A stretch of DNA of 63,844 bases, the filler included, from Octopus bimaculoides (lineage: Eukaryota): NCBI RefSeq assembly GCF_001194135.2. It is 10 parts of 10 records of this genome, joined end to end, with 100 filler letters (N's around TTAATTAATTAA, not from the genome) between each part and the next. Parts side by side here need not be neighbours in the genome. Positions count along the whole stretch, not along the records: positions 4,073 to 15,848 come from NC_069009.1; 9 more parts are not named here. One strand, written 5' to 3'. The position numbers and the translations under genes were made by a program. The notes beneath the pieces were generated by a model. That model worked only from the letters and a program-made list of their open reading frames with translations. It was not told the DNA's origin and made no database searches. Below are positions 4,790 to 15,948 of this stretch, in pieces. Numbering within the stretch: the first letter of the stretch is position 1; each line of letters begins with the position of its first letter.

Positions 4790-5711
4790 NNNNNNNNNNN
4801 NNNNNNNNNNNNNNNNNNNNNNNNNNNNNNNNNNNNNNNNNNNNNNNNNNNNNNNNNNNNNNNNNNNNNNNNNNNNNNNNNNNNNNNNNNNNNNNNNNNN
4901 NNNNNNNNNNNNNNNNNNNNNNNNNNNNNNNNNNNNNNNNNNNNNNNNNNNNNNNNNNNNNNNNNNNNNNNNNNNNNNNNNNNNNNNNNNNNNNNNNNNN
5001 NNNNNNNNNNNNNNNNNNNNNNNNNNNNNNNNNNNNNNNNNNNNNNNNNNNNNNNNNNNNNNNNNNNNNNNNNNNNNNNNNNNNNNNNNNNNNNNNNNNN
5101 NNNNNNNNNNNNNNNNNNNNNNNNNNNNNNNNNNNNNNNNNNNNNNNNNNNNNNNNNNNNNNNNNNNNNNNNNNNNNNNNNNNNNNNNNNNNNNNNNNNN
5201 NNNNNNNNNNNNNNNNNNNNNNNNNNNNNNNNNNNNNNNNNNNNNNNNNNNNNNNNNNNNNNNNNNNNNNNNNNNNNNNNNNNNNNNNNNNNNNNNNNNN
5301 NNNNNNNNNNNNNNNNNNNNNNNNNNNNNNNNNNNNNNNNNNNNNNNNNNNNNNNNNNNNNNNNNNNNNNNNNNNNNNNNNNNNNNNNNNNNNNNNNNNN
5401 NNNNNNNNNNNNNNNNNNNNNNNNNNNNNNNNNNNNNNNNNNNNNNNNNNNNNNNNNNNNNNNNNNNNNNNNNNNNNNNNNNNNNNNNNNNNNNNNNNNN
5501 NNNNNNNNNNNNNNNNNNNNNNNNNNNNNNNNNNNNNNNNNNNNNNNNNNNNNNNNNNNNNNNNNNNNNNNNNNNNNNNNNNNNNNNNNNNNNNNNNNNN
5601 NNNNNNNNNNNNNNNNNNNNNNNNNNNNNNNNNNNNNNNNNNNNGAAAATATAAAAATACAAATTTTGTTTCAATTACATCATATCTATTTATCCATTTT
5701 TCTAATTTTCT

Positions 5712-6065
5712 ATGTATGTGTCTGTCCATCTGTTTGTCTGTGTCTATCTATCTATCCATTTATCTGTCTGTCTGTCTATCTCTCTATCAGTGTGTGTCTG
5801 TCTGTCTAAGTATGTATATATCTATCTATCTGTCTATCTATCTCTTCTAAGCATCTATGTACGTATCTGCCTATCTGTCTGTCTATCTATCTATGTATCT
5901 ACCTATATGTCTATGTATTTATCTGTCTGTCTATGTATTTATCTATCAATCTATCTCTTTCTCTAAGTATCTATCTATCTATCTATCTATCTATATTTTT
6001 GTCAGTTTGTTTATGTGTGTATATAGAAACGTGTCTATCTGTGTATAAATATATCGTTTATCTAT
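5712..6065. repeat. Degenerate (TCTA/TCTG)n tetranucleotide tract
   Basis: Read directly from the sequence. Confidence 0.9.
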
Positions 6066-6658: not shown

Positions 6659-7621
6659 NNNNNNNNNNNNNNNNNNNNNNNNNNNNNNNNNNNNNNNNNN
6701 NNNNNNNNNNNNNNNNNNNNNNNNNNNNNNNNNNNNNNNNNNNNNNNNNNNNNNNNNNNNNNNNNNNNNNNNNNNNNNNNNNNNNNNNNNNNNNNNNNNN
6801 NNNNNNNNNNNNNNNNNNNNNNNNNNNNNNNNNNNNNNNNNNNNNNNNNNNNNNNNNNNNNNNNNNNNNNNNNNNNNNNNNNNNNNNNNNNNNNNNNNNN
6901 NNNNNNNNNNNNNNNNNNNNNNNNNNNNNNNNNNNNNNNNNNNNNNNNNNNNNNNNNNNNNNNNNNNNNNNNNNNNNNNNNNNNNNNNNNNNNNNNNNNN
7001 NNNNNNNNNNNNNNNNNNNNNNNNNNNNNNNNNNNNNNNNNNNNNNNNNNNNNNNNNNNNNNNNNNNNNNNNNNNNNNNNNNNNNNNNNNNNNNNNNNNN
7101 NNNNNNNNNNNNNNNNNNNNNNNNNNNNNNNNNNNNNNNNNNNNNNNNNNNNNNNNNNNNNNNNNNNNNNNNNNNNNNNNNNNNNNNNNNNNNNNNNNNN
7201 NNNNNNNNNNNNNNNNNNNNNNNNNNNNNNNNNNNNNNNNNNNNNNNNNNNNNNNNNNNNNNNNNNNNNNNNNNNNNNNNNNNNNNNNNNNNNNNNNNNN
7301 NNNNNNNNNNNNNNNNNNNNNNNNNNNNNNNNNNNNNNNNNNNNNNNNNNNNNNNNNNNNNNNNNNNNNNNNNNNNNNNNNNNNNNNNNNNNNNNNNNNN
7401 NNNNNNNNNNNNNNNNNNNNNNNNNNNNNNNNNNNNNNNNNNNNNNNNNNNNNNNNNNNNNNNNNNNNNNNNNNNNNNNNNNNNNNNNNNNNNNNNNNNN
7501 NNNNNNNNNNNNNNNNNNNNNNNNNNNNNNNNNNNNNNNNNNNNNNNNNNNNNNNNNNNNNNNNNNNNNNNNNNNNNNNNNNNNNNNNNNNNNNNNNNNN
7601 NNNNNNNNNNNNNNNNNNNNN

Positions 7622-7915: not shown

Positions 7916-8204
7916 ACACAAATAACACTCACACTCACACTCATACATACAAATTCACACACATACAGTGAGCCTCACACAGACGTGCACACGTTCACAC
8001 ACACACAAAGCATGACACATGCAAAGCTACACACACACACACACACATACGGAAGGCATCTCACACACACTGACGCACACATAGAGCTTCTCATACTTCC
8101 TACACGTACACAGAGACACGCAAACCCATCTTTACTTCCTCCTCCTCATCCACTGTGTGATGACGTCATCGGAGGTCACCATGTCACATGATTCAATGCT
8201 TCGC

Positions 8205-8608
8205 AGTGAGCGAGACGGAGGAAGGGATTGATAGATAGATAGATAGACAAGGTGGAAGTGGGAGGAGAGGCGGAGGCGGAGGCAGGGATAGAGAGCGAAT
8301 GAAAGAGAGAGAGAGAGAAAGAAACAGAATTGATAGAGAAGGTAAGAGTAGGAGGCAGAGGCAGAGACAGTGATAGAAAAGGTGAAGAGAGAGAAAGAGA
8401 GAAAGAAAGGAATATATAACGAGCGATAGAGAAGGTAAGAGTAGGAGGCAGAGATAGAGAGAGAGAAAGTAAGAGTGAAAGGTAGAGGCAGCGAAAGACA
8501 GATAGAAGAGAAAGCAATAAATAGAGAGGGTGAGGTAAAGGTAGCGAAAGATAGAAAGAGGTTGATTAAGAGATAGAGTGTGTGAGAAGTAGAGGCAAAT
8601 ATATATAC

Positions 8609-8640
<32 letters not shown>

Positions 8641-9790
8641 GGACGGAAGAGAAAGGGACAGAAGTAGCGTTAGACAGAAAAAGTAAGAGAGAGAGTGAGA
8701 GAGAGGTAGAGAATGTGGGAGTTAGAGGATGAGTGGTGTAGTCAAAGAGGGAGAGGGAGAGTGAAGAGTGTGACACTAGTAGCGATAAAGAGAGGGGGAT
8801 ACGGAAAGGAACAGCGATAGAAAGGGTATAAGAGGGTTGGCGGTTGATTAAGTGATAGACAGAGGTAAGCGAGAGAGAGAGTGAGTGGAACAAGTAGTGA
8901 TAGATAAAGAGGGTAAAAGAGAGTGAGTGATTGATGAAGAGGTAGAAAGTAAGAGAGAATGAATGACTTAACGATAGACAGTGAGTGCTAAAGAGAGAGA
9001 AGGGGAGGAGAGAAAATGTGTGGGAGAAGTGGTGATAGAAAGAGAGGGTGAGAGAGCGTCGGAGATTGACAGATTGAGAGAGAAAGAGAAGCAGACGATG
9101 AGGCTGGAGTGTGAGGGTGAATGGCACAGGCATGGATAGACAGAGAATGTGAGAGAGAGACGTAGGGACAGACAGAGAGGGTAAGAGAGCGTTGGCGATT
9201 GATTAAAACATAGAGGGAGGGTGAGAAGTAACAATAGACAGAGTAAAAGTGATTGAGTGAGTAATTGTGTAAGAGAGAGAGACGTAGAGATAGACAGAGA
9301 GGGTGAGAGAGCGTCGGGAATTGATTGAAAGATAGAGAGAGGGTGAGAGAGGTAACACTAGATAGAGTAAAAGTGAGTGAGTGAGTAATTGTGTANNNNN
9401 NNNNNTGAGTAATTGTGTGAGAGAGAGAGACGTAGAGATAGACAGAGAGGGTGAGAGAGCGTCGGGAATTGATTGAAAGATAGAGAGAGGGTGAGAGAGG
9501 TAACACTAGATAGAGTAAAAGTGAGTGAGTGAGTAATTGTGTAAGAGAGAGAGGGTAAGAGAGCGTTGGAGATTGATTAGAATATAGAAAGAGGGTGAGA
9601 GGTAACAATAGACAGAGTAAAAGGGATTGAGTGAGTAATTGTGTAAGCGTTGGAGATTGATTAATAGAGTGGAAGGGTGAGTGAGACAAAGGTAGCGATA
9701 AACAGAAAAAGTGAGAGATAGATAGACAGAGAGAGAGAGAAAGCGCGAGAAAGTGAGGCGAAGGAATCAATAAGGAGAAAGTGAAAGAGA
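8205..9790. repeat. ~1.6-kb purine-rich (GA) tract with degenerate ~120-bp minisatellite-like units
   Basis: Recurring GAGAGGGTGAGAGAGCGTC..ATTGATT..GAGTAATTGTGT units; the + strand is almost entirely A/G. Confidence 0.85.
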
Positions 9791-10149
9791 GAGTGTTACT
9801 TCTGTAGGCCAGCAGTCTACTCAAGCTTTTCCCCTCCTCATGTTATTGTAGCCCTTCCTCCTACTTTTCCTCCAAGCGCACATGTCACTGTGTGTATATA
9901 CACAGACGTATATATAACACATCTGCTTAAACATCAATGTATACGCACACACATGCGTACGTAGATAGAGCCATGGCTATATATACACACGTATTATCTT
10001 TTCTTTCTTCTTCCTATACATAAACACACGTATATGCTGTATATATATAGATATATATAGATACTCATTCATTCATATTACACATACAAACAAGATATCT
10101 TTCAAGTAAATCATTACAACATTATGAAGAGAGAGAGAACATCGTTGTC

Positions 10150-10361: not shown

Positions 10362-11355
10362 ATGGCTTCTCGCAAACATTGTGTGATTCTCAAGACCGTC
10401 GTCACTATCTATCCCCGCAAGAAGCGATATTTATTGGTCCTGAGGCGGGGGTCCCTGACATATTGGCCCTACAACGATAACAGTGACGACGACGAATCGT
10501 CGTGGTTTAACAACAGCACCGACAAAACGGCAGCTGGTTCGGGTTTTGGAGGCAACCCCGTCGCTGCTGCTGCTGCTGCTTCGAACCCCGTTCGCAAGGT
10601 CAGCTTCGATACGAACCCGCAGAATTACAGCGAGTGGAACGATAGCATAAGAAAGGACTCCGATCAGAGAACCCCTTCGGTCGAACCCTTGGCAGGAGCA
10701 CGGCCCACGGAGACCACAACACCAGCAACGCAACCCCAGCCTCCGTCACCACTTTGTGCCTCTCAGGAGACGAGTGCCGCTTCGGAAAGCGGCGGCGGCA
10801 CTTTGTCCAACATCACCAACACCACTTTCCACCACCAACACCATCACAACAACAACAACCACCACCACCACCACCACAGTAACAACCATCACCACCACCA
10901 CCACCACCACAACAACAATTATAATCGTCATCATCACGAAAATCGTCGTCATAATAGTAATAACATCAACAATAATAATTATTATGATACTAATACCAAC
11001 ACTAACAGCAATATTGATTATAATAATAGTTACATTAGCGGTAGTGGTGGTGGTCATGTTGGGAACGACAATTCCTACAACGATAATAACACCGAGTTTT
11101 GTATTAACCTGAACGATGTTATAGGGTGTCATTGTTACAAAGGGAAAACCCCGGACGACAGCCAGGCGTATTTTACTGTATATGCCTACCCCTTCAGACG
11201 GAAAATCCTCAGCGGTCGGCAAATCCGGCACAGGTTGTCGGTGACATTTGGAATATTCTGCCAGGAAAATTTCCAAGAGAATCTGAGACTAGCCGAGACA
11301 TGGAAAAAATTAATTGGACATTTAGCACGTGGGAAACCAATCAATGGACTTGAAG
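10362..11355 (+). CDS. SPHK: Sphingosine kinase (SPHK2-type), first coding exon: N-terminal PH-like domain interrupted by a 209-aa low-complexity insert
   Basis: ATG in good Kozak context (gccaATGg). The C-terminal part LNDVIGCHCYKGKTPDDSQAYFTVYAYPFRRKILSG...QENFQENLRLAETWKKLIGHLARGKPI resembles my recollection of human SPHK2 (..VSGCCTLRSRSPSDSAAYFCIYTYPRGRR..ATYEENRAEAQRWATALTCLLRGLP). The N-terminal TIYPRKKRYLLVLRRGSL resembles GSYPARGPRFALTLTSQAL. Donor GAAG|GTAAAG at 11355/11356 (phase 1). CpG/GC-rich against an AT-rich background. The kinase core exons were not found in the window. Confidence 0.85.
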
Positions 11356-12345
11356 GTAAAGGCCCTGTTTTTCTTTTTTAATCCCGTGTATTTCGTTTTA
11401 TTTCAATTCGAATGTGTGTGTGTGTTTATAGTTTATGCTTTTGTTGTATTTAAACATTTCATTCTTGTTCCTCATCTTAGCAGTCTTTCGGGGACGCCAA
11501 AGTTCAATACTGGCACAAGAGGGGGAGAAGGGGTGACGTTCAAAAATCTAAGATTTCGAACCCTCTTCCGACCCCCTTTTTTTTTTTATTAGAAAGGTTT
11601 CTCCCCCATCGTCTTCAAGTGCGTGGTACAAACAAAAAATGTGGAGAATATTTATAGTCATCCTTTTCTTATATTTAGCATCTCGTTCGATTCCCCTCAC
11701 GAAGGCAGATTTGAGGGATGCTAAAATTCAACACTGGTCGACGAGAAAGAACAAACGTGAAAAAATTAAGGATTTCGTAAAAAACAATTATTTTTTTTTT
11801 ATATTTCAAAAAGGGACCTTGAATCCTTTGGTGTAAAAAACAAAATATTGAAAAACCCCGACGTAAAACGGATAAAATTCAACTTATGTGGGACAGCTAT
11901 CCTGGAAGCCTACCTAAATTTTCCTTTAATCATACATAATTACATATATTTATTATGTATATAAAGATGCACGATTAGTTACTCCCATTGTTATACTTTA
12001 GCGTCCCTCTCCTTGTTCTCCATCAAATCGGTCGTGTGGGGGTTGCTAAAGTTCAATACTGCCTCTATTCTGCTTCTTGCTTCATTCATTGTCTCGCAGA
12101 CTTAAGACGGTAAATTTGGTAAGAAGTATTACAATGGTGGTGAAACGGTAGACAAGACTGTCTTCAGGTTCTATAGACCTTGACACTGAGAGTTCAAATT
12201 TTACTAATGTCTGTTTTGTCTCTCATTCTTTCTCCATTCGGAATAAATAAATGAAAGAGTTTCTGTTATGCTTTTTCGTTTTTTTCCTCCTTCATTCTTT
12301 TTTTCTTTCATTCTTTTACCTTCTTCCGCTGCTATCGTTTCCTAT

Positions 12346-12520
12346 GCCTTCTTCTTCTTCTTCTTCTTCTTCTTCTTCTTCTTCTTCTTCTTCGTCTTCT
12401 TCTTCTTCTTCTTCTTCTTCGTCTTCGTCTTCGTCTTCGTCTTCTTCTTCTTCTTCTTCTTCTTCTTCTTCTTCTTCTTCTTCAGGTATCTGTCTATTTA
12501 TTTATTTATTTATTTATTTA
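12346..12520. repeat. (TTC)n ~45 units plus (TTTA)n
   Basis: Read directly from the sequence. Confidence 0.95.
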
Positions 12521-13337: not shown

Positions 13338-14145
13338 NNNNNNNNNNNNNNNNNNNNNNNNNNNNNNNNNNNNNNNNNNNNNNNNNNNNNNNNNNNNNNN
13401 NNNNNNNNNNNNNNNNNNNNNNNNNNNNNNNNNNNNNNNNNNNNNNNNNNNNNNNNNNNNNNNNNNNNNNNNNNNNNNNNNNNNNNNNNNNNNNNNNNNN
13501 NNNNNNNNNNNNNNNNNNNNNNNNNNNNNNNNNNNNNNNNNNNNNNNNNNNNNNNNNNNNNNNNNNNNNNNNNNNNNNNNNNNNNNNNNNNNNNNNNNNN
13601 NNNNNNNNNNNNNNNNNNNNNNNNNNNNNNNNNNNNNNNNNNNNNNNNNNNNNNNNNNNNNNNNNNNNNNNNNNNNNNNNNNNNNNNNNNNNNNNNNNNN
13701 NNNNNNNNNNNNNNNNNNNNNNNNNNNNNNNNNNNNNNNNNNNNNNNNNNNNNNNNNNNNNNNNNNNNNNNNNNNNNNNNNNNNNNNNNNNNNNNNNNNN
13801 NNNNNNNNNNNNNNNNNNNNNNNNNNNNNNNNNNNNNNNNNNNNNNNNNNNNNNNNNNNNNNNNNNNNNNNNNNNNNNNNNNNNNNNNNNNNNNNNNNNN
13901 NNNNNNNNNNNNNNNNNNNNNNNNNNNNNNNNNNNNNNNNNNNNNNNNNNNNNNNNNNNNNNNNNNNNNNNNNNNNNNNNNNNNNNNNNNNNNNNNNNNN
14001 NNNNNNNNNNNNNNNNNNNNNNNNNNNNNNNNNNNNNNNNNNNNNNNNNNNNNNNNNNNNNNNNNNNNNNNNNNNNNNNNNNNNNNNNNNNNNNNNNNNN
14101 NNNNNNNNNNNNNNNNNNNNNNNNNNNNNNNNNNNNNNNNNNNNN

Positions 14146-14710
14146 NGTCCACTGCAACAGTGAAAGTATCTGACATAAACCTGTCAGTGAGCGATCAATA
14201 CATCGAAAATTTGCTTTTCTCAGCCTGACAAACAGCAGAGCCTAGGCTGGTAGGTGAACGCATGTTGTTGCCGGAGAAGGTGTCACAGAATATGGTATCC
14301 CAGATGAGGGGTCTACCATCACAGAACAGGAACATTGTCATACTGTAAGGCCTTTTATCGGCACCTCAGTCTAGCCCTGTTGGATCGAGCTGAGAAGAGA
14401 ACCCTGCGGTATATAGGCTGTGCTTTATGATTTCATTAAGGGCAACATGGCGTAGAAGGCAGGCAGCCCAATACTGGCACGAGAATGGGTGGGGGCCGAA
14501 AAATTCCACTGGATTCCCAGAGGGCATTTGTGAGCCTCAGGGAAAACCCTAGTTTCAATGAATAGACCTGCTCCAAATATGTGCCTGTAGACTGGAGAAC
14601 GACATCTGGATGAGGACCTGTAACCTTAGTGGTCAGGGTAACCCTGTATCCTTTGGGTTTCCTTGATTGGCCCAAGCTGGAGTTTTTCCTTCATCAAGGA
14701 GGACTGCATC
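14146..14710 (-). mobile_element. Probable RTE LINE 5' region remnant
   Basis: Minus strand TGATGAAGGAAAAACTCCAG resembles the RTE 5' UTR motif (GAAGGAAAACTC); GC-richer than its flanks. Confidence 0.3.
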
Positions 14711-15573: not shown

Positions 15574-15607
<34 letters not shown>

Positions 15608-15617
15608 CATATATATA

Positions 15618-15648
<31 letters not shown>

Positions 15649-15948
15649 GTGTGTGTATATATATATGTGTGTGTGTGTGTATATATATATGTGTGTATAT
15701 ATATATGTATGTGTGTATATATATATGTGTGTGTGTATATATATATGTGTGTGTGTGTATATATATATATATATGTTTGTATATATATATATATGTTTGT
15801 ATATATATATATATATGTTTGTATATATATATATATATGTTTGTATATNNNNNNNNNNNNNNNNNNNNNNNNNNNNNNNNNNNNNNNNNNNNTTAATTAA
15901 TTAANNNNNNNNNNNNNNNNNNNNNNNNNNNNNNNNNNNNNNNNNNNN

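What the first reader, a model, noticed from the sequence alone, without database searches (positions are those of the whole stretch)
10470..11096. Sphingosine kinase PH-like domain split by a 209-residue in-frame disordered insert
Two blocks that match the SPHK2 N-terminal domain (..YLLVLRRGSLTYWP and FCINLNDVIGCHC..) are about a dozen residues apart in human SPHK2 as I recall it. Here they are separated by exactly 627 nt. The insert stays open in the kinase frame through TAA-rich triplet repeats, and I found no GT donor at its 5' edge, so it appears to be coding rather than a retained intron. It is modular: acidic SDDDES, Ala6, Pro/Thr-rich, Gly3, His/Asn run, Asn/Tyr run. A split-PH architecture created by microsatellite expansion could rewire localisation or regulation of a lipid-signalling kinase. 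The functional effect is inference.
Basis: partly seen in the sequence, partly recalled or inferred. Interest (0 to 1): 0.75.

Follow-up and report, generated by a model that had tools for sequence, protein, structure and literature searches.

The report
Long disordered loop inside sphingosine-kinase PH-like domain
The first coding exon of a sphingosine-kinase gene carries a real, in-frame 209-codon low-complexity stretch inside one surface loop of its small lipid-binding (PH-like) domain. It is an unusually large example of an ordinary kind of change, loop expansion by simple-sequence growth, and no function is shown.

Summary
One open exon runs from ATG 10362 to 11355, with the donor GT at 11356. 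It encodes two conserved blocks (residues 1-36 and 246-331) separated by exactly 627 nt (209 codons) with no stop in the kinase frame.

- **Family.** Both blocks match the N-terminal domain of annotated mollusc, amphioxus and shark sphingosine kinases.
- **Fold.** AlphaFold2 folds the two blocks together (pLDDT above 90) into seven strands plus a C-terminal helix. Foldseek matches are PH-like domains. The insert sits in the β3-β4 loop and is predicted disordered.
- **Loop length.** In 90 homologues this loop has a median of 13 residues, including scallop, oyster, periwinkle and pond snail. Here it is 212.
- **Nearest relative.** The closest relative (ENA contig, synonymous sites saturated) has a 102-codon in-frame open insert at the same place, with weak collinear similarity.
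- **Coding evidence.** There is no internal Met, no GT-AG pair that removes the insert in frame, GC is exon-like, and RNY periodicity follows the kinase frame. I conclude it is translated.
- **Limits.** Only about half is simple-sequence DNA. Other lineages expanded the same loop independently, to 34-128 residues. The kinase exons lie outside the piece. Transcripts and function remain untested.

It is a new variant of a known kind, of modest interest.

The parts
10362..10469 (+). Start codon and the N-terminal half of the PH-like domain (residues 1-36; predicted strands β1 8-16, β2 20-28, β3 31-36)
   Evidence: ORF. MAS... aligns with the start of the scallop, oyster and periwinkle sphingosine kinases. 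pLDDT is 92-95. dN is 0.29 against the L001 copy, with synonymous sites saturated.
10470..11096 (+). In-frame 209-codon insert in the β3-β4 loop, predicted disordered. Part A (10470-~10805) is unique sequence, net acidic, rich in Ser/Thr/Pro and 58% GC. Part B (~10806-11096) is a His/Asn/Tyr-rich simple sequence.
   Evidence: 0 stops in frame. pLDDT is 32-60. No Pfam domain. RNY periodicity follows the kinase frame. The homologous position in L001 holds a 102-codon open insert.
10563..10580 (+). (GCT)6 microsatellite encoding Ala6
   Evidence: TRF
10807..10918 (+). CAC/AAC triplet array (period 3, higher-order period 27-30) encoding the His/Asn runs
   Evidence: TRF
11097..11355 (+). C-terminal half of the PH-like domain (residues 246-331; strands β4-β7 and the C-terminal helix 304-322). 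The exon ends in phase 1.
   Evidence: 70% identical to P0001. tblastn matches to about 30 full-length sphingosine kinases. pLDDT is 93-98. dN/dS is about 0.08.
11356..11361 (+). Splice donor GTAAAG after GAAG. The L001 copy has its donor (GTAAGT) at the same position, and read-through ORFs of many homologues diverge from the spliced full-length proteins at this point.
   Evidence: for example P0017 ...VHKQ|GK... against the full-length P0024 ...VHKQ|DV...

Best explanation
This is exon 1 of an SPHK2-type sphingosine kinase gene. It encodes the basic, PH-like N-terminal lipid-binding domain of the enzyme. The β3-β4 hairpin loop of that domain is about 13 residues long in most animals. Here it has grown to 212 residues by gaining an intrinsically disordered, low-complexity segment that is translated with the rest of the exon.

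β3 and β4 are neighbouring antiparallel strands, so the two ends of the insert sit side by side. The domain can still fold, with the insert extruded as a floppy loop at the open, membrane-facing end of the β-sandwich.

The insert predates the split from the nearest relative found, which carries 102 codons. It has since changed length, partly by slippage of the CAC/AAC/AAT and GCT codon repeats.

What is shown: the reading frame, the homology of the two halves, loop lengths across homologues, the predicted fold and predicted disorder, and purifying selection on both halves. What is inferred: that the insert is present in the mature mRNA and protein, and what it does. My best guess is that it is a tolerated, near-neutral loop expansion. 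At most it tunes membrane or partner binding, because its acidic first part and His-rich second part lie next to the basic lipid-binding face.
For: - **One exon.** A single ORF runs from 10362 to the donor at 11356.
- **Frame.** The insert is 627 nt with 0 in-frame stops. Only 0.02% of shuffles are open.
- **No alternative start.** There is no in-frame Met after codon 1 (sequence). The conserved C-half can therefore only be translated through the insert.
- **No intron.** No GT-AG pair removes the insert in frame. The only in-frame pair, 10599-10766, is 168 nt and has a weak GTCAGC donor.
- **Composition.** Part A of the insert is 55-62% GC, against 27-40% in the flanking non-coding DNA. RNY periodicity is in the kinase frame: R1 0.66, Y3 0.59, G1 0.37, against 0.41-0.50, 0.33-0.50 and 0.20-0.23 in the other two frames.
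- **Second genome.** An independent genome (L001, ENA contig) has the same exon and donor with a 306-nt insert. That insert has 0 stops in frame and 2-16 in the other five frames.
- **Selection.** Synonymous sites between the two genomes are saturated while dN is 0.22-0.29.
- **Insert similarity.** The two inserts align collinearly with z = 4.1 and share the motifs SSW..NNSTD and HNNNYN.
- **Family.** 265 homologues were found. The full-length ones that carry names are sphingosine kinases of Mizuhopecten, Littorina, Ostrea and Branchiostoma (UniProt names for Sinanodonta and, as a DAGKc-domain protein, Lymnaea). All of these have the short loop.
- **Fold.** AF2 gives both halves pLDDT above 90, seven strands plus a C-terminal helix, and the insert below 60. 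The short-loop homologue P0003 has mean pLDDT 88.5, and all of its top 50 Foldseek PDB matches are PH-like folds (SIN1, Spt16M, Tfb1/p62, GRK2, Trio), with probability 0.99-1.00.
- **Literature.** The SPHK2 N-terminal domain is treated as a phosphoinositide-binding PH domain (PMC10041065, citing Don & Rosen 2009).
Against: - No transcript or peptide evidence could be obtained. The protein collection holds no annotated orthologue from this or a closely related species.
- Two other frames of the insert have only one stop each, so openness in part B owes much to repeat composition.
- Part B is 30-39% GC, which is as AT-rich as an intron.
- The window model's Foldseek matches to PH domains are individually weak (E of 0.08 or more). 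The fold assignment rests mainly on the short-loop homologue.
- The kinase exons are not in the piece, nor within 10 kb downstream in L001.
- Nothing bears on function.
Confidence: 0.8

Rival explanations
1. All or part of the insert is removed from the mRNA, either as an unrecognised intron or as an 'exitron' inside the coding exon. The mature protein would then have a short or shorter loop.
For: - Part B is AT-rich, like the introns here.
- One in-frame GT..AG pair exists: 10599 AAG|GTCAGC to 10766 CCTCTCAG|GAG, 168 nt. Its acceptor scores above the 99th percentile of the piece.
- No transcript data were available.
Against: - No donor/acceptor pair removes the whole insert or restores a loop of about 13 residues.
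- The one candidate donor has C at +3 and no G at +5.
- The insert length is a multiple of 3 and the frame is open in two genomes whose synonymous sites are saturated. An intron has no reason to preserve that.
- Part A is more GC-rich than the conserved exon parts and shows codon periodicity.
Confidence: 0.12
2. The insert is a functional regulatory module rather than tolerated filler. The His/Asn tract and the conserved Trp motifs would mediate pH- or metal-dependent membrane binding, partner binding, condensate formation or nuclear targeting of the kinase.
For: - An insert at this loop has persisted in two deeply diverged genomes. Short motifs (SSW, NNSTD, HNNNYN) are retained although the rest has diverged.
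- The loop lies at the lipid-binding end of a strongly basic domain, with 22 K/R against 8 D/E.
- Part A is net acidic (15 D/E against 7 K/R) and part B holds 24 His.
Against: - Length and sequence differ about two-fold between the two species, and only the conserved C-half of the exon, not the insert, aligns at DNA level.
- The similarity is weak (z about 4) and partly compositional.
- Independent expansions of the same loop with unrelated sequence in other lineages suggest a permissive site.
- No known domain was found.
Confidence: 0.15
3. The region is an assembly artefact or a decaying pseudogene exon, not a functional gene segment.
For: The piece is a gapped scaffold with N runs at 4790-5644, 6659-7621, 9396-9405 and 13338-14146. 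No downstream kinase exon is visible.
Against: - No gap lies within 950 nt of the exon.
- An independent assembly of another species has the same architecture.
- Both halves are intact and under strong purifying selection: dN/dS is about 0.08 in the C-half, and the start codon and donor are conserved.
Confidence: 0.03

Closest known systems
N-terminal lipid-binding (PH-like) domain of SPHK2-type sphingosine kinases (e.g. Mizuhopecten XP_021347415, Littorina XP_070183088, Ostrea XP_048758666, Branchiostoma XP_019628153; human SPHK2 N-terminus, Don & Rosen 2009)
   Same: - Both halves align over the whole domain.
- The start codon is conserved.
- The intron position after ...EG is conserved.
- The domain is basic.
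- The predicted fold is seven strands plus a helix.
   Different: The β3-β4 loop is 212 residues here, against 10-27 in most homologues. The catalytic exons are not in the piece, so the linkage to a kinase is by orthology only.
Split PH domains (PLCγ1 2fjl, α1-syntrophin 2adz, myosin X, ROCK, Vps36 GLUE 2hth)
   Same: A PH-like fold is interrupted in a loop and predicted to reassemble from two distant halves. PLCγ1 and syntrophin are also split at β3-β4 (my own knowledge). These entries appear among the Foldseek matches.
   Different: Classical split PH domains carry folded domains as the insert (SH2-SH2-SH3, PDZ, C1, a second PH, zinc fingers). Here the insert is low-complexity and predicted disordered, with no domain.
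Low-complexity (Asn-, His-rich) insertions in loops of conserved domains, as is common in Plasmodium and Dictyostelium proteomes
   Same: In-frame simple-sequence expansion within a surface loop, rapid length change between relatives, and conserved flanks.
   Different: The host here is an animal. Half of the insert is non-repetitive sequence, and a few motifs are retained between species.
Ceramide kinase / CERKL N-terminal PH domain
   Same: A related lipid-kinase family with an N-terminal PH domain that packs on the catalytic domain (PMC10041065).
   Different: The named full-length homologues here are sphingosine kinases, not CERK. No CERK-named homologue appeared among those looked up.

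Membership tests
SPHK2-type sphingosine kinase, N-terminal PH-like domain | Sequence homology of both halves to the N-terminal domain of annotated sphingosine kinases | tested here: met
   Exhaustive profile search found 265 hits. The named full-length hits are sphingosine kinases. tblastn of about 30 full-length kinases hits 11079-11357, and some also hit 10362-10496.
SPHK2-type sphingosine kinase, N-terminal PH-like domain | PH-like fold: seven-stranded β-sandwich capped by a C-terminal helix | tested here: met
   The AF2 window model has strands 8-16, 20-28, 31-36, 246-260, 269-275, 278-289 and 292-298 and helix 304-322, with pLDDT above 90. The homologue P0003 model has Foldseek top-50 matches that are all PH-like, with E down to 1.4e-4. 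The window model's own matches are weaker (SIN1 PH, E = 0.08, probability 0.99).
SPHK2-type sphingosine kinase, N-terminal PH-like domain | Followed by a DAGK-type lipid-kinase catalytic domain in the same protein | tested here: inconclusive
   No catalytic-domain match lies in the 4.5 kb downstream in the piece, or in 10 kb downstream in L001. The exon ends at a conserved donor, so later exons presumably lie beyond the piece.
SPHK2-type sphingosine kinase, N-terminal PH-like domain | Conserved phase-1 intron right after the domain (...EG|) | tested here: met
   GAAG|GTAAAG at 11355/11356 in the window and GAAG|GTAAGT in L001. Read-through ORFs of many homologues diverge from the spliced proteins at this point.
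SPHK2-type sphingosine kinase, N-terminal PH-like domain | Binds phosphoinositides or acidic lipids | not testable with these tools
   The only evidence is indirect: the domain is basic, with 22 K/R against 8 D/E, and the literature makes this statement for SPHK2.
Split PH domain (PLCγ1 / syntrophin type) | Two PH half-domains separated in sequence that fold into one PH domain | tested here: met
   This is a prediction only. Both halves have pLDDT above 90 and form paired strands in one model.
Split PH domain (PLCγ1 / syntrophin type) | The intervening sequence consists of one or more autonomously folded domains | tested here: not met
   No Pfam family matched (best E = 0.48). pLDDT is 32-60, with only two four-residue helices across residues 37-245.
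Retained intron / exitron | Canonical GT..AG boundaries whose removal keeps the frame | tested here: not met
   No pair spans the insert. The only in-frame pair is 168 nt with a weak donor. Actual splicing could not be tested.

The most novel reading that the evidence does not exclude
The β3-β4 loop insert is a selected regulatory module of a lipid-signalling kinase. An acidic segment and a 24-His / 40-Asn tract sit at the phosphoinositide-binding face of the PH-like domain. Together they would make membrane recruitment, or nuclear or condensate targeting, of the sphingosine kinase sensitive to pH or metal ions. The conserved Trp motifs would act as docking sites.
Probability: 0.1. Interest if true: 0.6.

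Novelty: new variant of a known kind. Interest (0 to 1): 0.3.

Why it matters
- **Fold tolerance.** If the insert is translated, a 123-residue PH-like domain carries a loop 1.7 times its own length. That makes it a natural test case for how much disordered sequence a PH fold tolerates at the classical split-PH position.
- **Recurrence.** The same loop has grown repeatedly in this family, to 34-128 residues in other lineages. This marks it as a permissive site, useful for engineering tags into sphingosine kinases.
- **Annotation.** Gene predictors may wrongly introduce an intron here or start the model downstream.
- **Signalling.** It matters for sphingolipid signalling only if the insert turns out to affect localisation or lipid binding, which is untested.

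Tried and rejected
- **Whole-exon search.** It found only P0001. The His/Asn words seem to have swamped the candidate list, because P0002 and P0003 were missed.
- **Flank-profile search and C-half search.** They found two hits and none, so the word index is sparse for this family. The exhaustive representative search was what worked.
- **Exact look-up of the window ORF.** It is not on record, so neither the species nor more flanking DNA could be obtained.
- **Source of P0001.** The ENA accession of the P0001 contig appears in no paper.
- **Mixed alignment.** Aligning the two window halves as separate rows with homologues misaligned the N-half onto the C-half. This revealed an internal resemblance but made that alignment useless for searching.
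- **Pfam on the exon.** Nothing was found, and Pfam seems to have no model for this domain.
- **Rfam and tRNA scans of the piece.** Nothing was found.
- **DNA comparison, window against L001.** Only 11114-11338 aligns, so no nucleotide-level test of the insert, such as an indel-phase count, was possible.
- **Don & Rosen 2009.** The paper is not held in the library.
- **Rejected readings.** The minus-strand ORFs 10431-10733 and 10746-11276 and the plus-strand ORF 10756-11112 overlap the insert. They are by-products of stop-poor triplet repeats and have no homologues.

Full report
**1. What is in the sequence**

A single ORF runs on the plus strand from ATG 10362 to a stop at 11381. The exon almost certainly ends earlier, at 11355, where GAAG is followed by GTAAAG. 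The translation begins MASRKHCVILKTVVTIYPRKKRYLLVLRRGSLTYWP (residues 1-36, ending at 10469). It ends EFCINLNDVIGCHCYKGKTPDDSQAYFTVYAYPFRRKILSGRQIRHRLSVTFGIFCQENFQENLRLAETWKKLIGHLARGKPINGLE (residues 246-331, starting at 11097).

Between these lie exactly 627 nt, or 209 codons (10470-11096), with no stop in this frame. TRF finds (GCT)6 at 10563-10580 and a CAC/AAC array at 10807-10918. The AAT/TAT-rich tail is cryptically simple. The first ~335 nt are unique sequence at 58% GC. The out-of-frame TAA triplets are real: the +2 frame has 23 stops.

Openness is significant against shuffles, only 0.02% of which are open. Two other frames have just one stop each, however, so I did not rely on openness alone.

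**2. What the two blocks are**

The word-indexed protein search was almost blind to this family, but it returned three useful proteins:
- P0001 is a 317-aa read-through ORF on a 206-kb ENA contig. It is 70% identical in the C-block and 46% in the N-block alignment.
- P0002 and P0003 have short loops.

An exhaustive profile search of 1.84 billion representatives gave 265 homologues. The full-length ones have this domain at the N-terminus, followed by a DAGK-type catalytic domain (...LVLINPxSGxGKA...SGDGL...). Where named, they are sphingosine kinase 1-like or 2-like from:
- Mizuhopecten, Littorina and Ostrea (molluscs);
- Branchiostoma (amphioxus);
- a shark.

Sinanodonta and Lymnaea entries carry the UniProt names 'sphingosine kinase' and 'DAGKc domain-containing protein'. 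The Solemya entry is only a 'hypothetical protein'.

The start codon aligns with theirs. Many read-through ORFs diverge from the spliced proteins exactly after ...EG, so the phase-1 intron position is conserved. No catalytic-domain exon lies in the remaining 4.5 kb of the piece, or in 10 kb downstream in the relative's locus L001. Attachment to a kinase is therefore inferred from orthology.

**3. Fold**

AlphaFold2 was run on the window exon with a 79-sequence alignment.
- Residues 8-36 form three strands with pLDDT 92-95.
- Residues 246-322 form four to five strands and a 19-residue C-terminal helix with pLDDT 93-98.
- Residues 37-245 have block-mean pLDDT of 32-60 (the margins score higher) and essentially no secondary structure.

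This is the PH-like topology with the insert in the β3-β4 hairpin loop. Foldseek matches of this model are led by the SIN1 PH domain (probability 0.99). They include the Tfb1 PH domain, the joined split PH of syntrophin and the split PH of PLCγ1, but the E-values are weak at 0.08 or more.

The short-loop homologue P0003 modelled at mean pLDDT 88.5. All of its top 50 PDB matches are PH-like folds with probability 0.99-1.00 and E down to 1.4e-4. A published domain classification also treats the SPHK2 N-terminal domain as a phosphoinositide-binding PH domain, citing Don & Rosen 2009 (PMC10041065). 'PH-like' is therefore supported, and the halves are predicted to fold together.

**4. Is the loop unusual?**

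I built HMMs of the N-block and the C-block and measured the residues between them in every hit. Among 90 confident homologues the median is 13 and the 5th-95th percentile range is 10-27. All the named molluscs fall in this short range. The long-loop cases are:

| Protein | Loop length (residues) |
|---|---|
| Window | 212 |
| P0150 | 128 |
| P0001 | 106 |
| P0045 | 53 |
| P0137 | 48 |
| P0064 | 34 |

The window has the longest loop seen. It is lineage-specific and not pan-molluscan. Several lineages have expanded the same loop with unrelated sequence, so it is a permissive hotspot. A second loop, after GCxC, is expanded in other members.

**5. Coding or intron?**

Six lines of evidence point to coding sequence.

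- **(a) No internal start.** There is no in-frame Met after codon 1, so the strongly conserved C-half can only be reached by translating through the insert or by splicing the insert out.
- **(b) No excising intron.** A PWM scan finds no donor at the 5' edge and no in-frame GT..AG pair spanning the insert. The only in-frame pair (10599-10766, 168 nt) has a poor donor, GTCAGC.
- **(c) Composition.** Part A is 55-62% GC, above the conserved exon parts and far above the flanking non-coding DNA at 27-40%. It also shows RNY periodicity in the kinase frame only.
- **(d) Second genome.** L001 has the same exon, start and donor. At the same loop it has a 306-nt insert with 0 stops in frame and 2-16 in the other five frames. 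Only 0.37% of its shuffles are open.
- **(e) Selection.** Between the two genomes synonymous sites are saturated (pS 0.73-0.96), while dN is 0.22-0.29 and dN/dS is about 0.08 in the C-half. Neutral DNA of that age would not stay open and in phase in both.
- **(f) Insert similarity.** The two inserts keep weak collinear similarity (z = 4.1 against shuffles). They share SSW..NNSTD(K/Q) and HNNNYN motifs and a Pro/Thr-rich middle. This suggests one ancestral insert that later changed about two-fold in length.

I put about 0.8 on the insert being translated in the main isoform. Direct transcript evidence could not be obtained. The exact ORF is not on record, and no annotated orthologue of a close species surfaced.

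**6. How it probably works**

What is shown is the anatomy described above. What follows is inference.

β3 and β4 are adjacent antiparallel strands, so the insert's ends are close and the loop can be extruded without breaking the fold. The same principle allows classical split PH domains, which in PLCγ1 and syntrophin use the same loop (my own knowledge).

The domain is strongly basic, with 22 K/R against 8 D/E. The insert's first 112 residues are net acidic (15 D/E against 7 K/R) and rich in Ser/Thr/Pro. The last 97 residues hold 24 His and 31 Asn.

In PH domains the β1-β2 and β3-β4 loops frame the lipid site, so an effect on membrane binding is conceivable. It could be electrostatic shielding or pH- or metal-dependent charge. 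The fast divergence in length and sequence, and the independent expansions elsewhere, make near-neutral tolerated expansion the most likely reading.

Codon-repeat slippage explains the Ala6 and His/Asn tracts but not the unique first half, so 'created by microsatellite expansion' is only partly right.

**7. Comparison and verdict**

The exon belongs to the SPHK2-type N-terminal PH-like domain family. Homology, fold and exon structure were tested and met. Linkage to the catalytic domain was not testable in this piece.

It works formally like a split PH domain, but it fails that family's usual feature of a folded inserted domain. It resembles most the low-complexity loop insertions known from Asn-rich proteomes.

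The organism was not identified.

I rate it a new variant of a known kind with interest about 0.3. The phenomenon is ordinary in kind, exceptional mainly in size, and without evidence of function.

Noticed in passing
window 10398-10463 vs 11163-11240: The N-block VVTIYPRKKRYLLVLRRGSLTY resembles the C-block FTVYAYPFRRKILSGRQIRHRLSVTF. MAFFT aligned the one onto the other, and BLASTP paired VTIYPRKKRYL with VYAYPFKKKIL. These are two 'YP-basic' β-hairpins of the same PH-like domain. This could be an ancient internal duplication or convergence.
   Followed up: no
window 10494-10526 and 10626-10667; L001 10163-10204: The insert contains two copies of a Trp-centred motif, ESSWFNNSTDK and YSEWNDSIRKDSDQ. 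The relative's insert has one, YSSWDPVINNSTDQ. This may be a short linear motif conserved within an otherwise divergent disordered loop, duplicated in the window species.
   Followed up: partly
window 10599-10766: This is the only in-frame GT..AG pair inside the exon (AAG|GTCAGC ... CCTCTCAG|GAG, 168 nt = 56 codons). The acceptor is strong and the donor weak. It could be an exitron giving a shorter-loop isoform.
   Followed up: partly
homologues P0150, P0045, P0137, P0064; P0034, P0060, P0062, P0063, P0100: The same β3-β4 loop is independently long (34-128 residues, unrelated Ser/Arg-rich sequence) in several unnamed homologues. A second loop, between GCxC and AYxxxYxYP, is expanded in another set that includes Lymnaea. 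The domain has two insertion hotspots.
   Followed up: partly
window 9151-9647: GA-rich tandem units of about 100-150 nt (about two copies for each period TRF called, 85-92% matches) with extreme GC skew (+0.8) lie 0.7-1.2 kb upstream of the start codon. The wider region 8132-9824 reads as CT/GA-rich simple sequence.
   Followed up: no
window 12348-12483; 5743-5994; 15578-15848: There are long microsatellites: (CTT)45 in the first intron about 1 kb after the donor, (TATC)n/(TCTATCTA)n, and (TA)/(TG) arrays at the end of the piece. The locus is very rich in simple repeats, which fits slippage-prone DNA.
   Followed up: no
window 4790-5644, 6659-7621, 9396-9405, 13338-14146: There are four internal N runs (assembly gaps) in the piece. 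None is within 950 nt of the exon.
   Followed up: yes
L001 14965-15813 and other called ORFs: The relative's contig carries several 160-280-aa ORFs around the exon with no Pfam hits on record. They may be repeat- or transposon-derived and were not examined.
   Followed up: no
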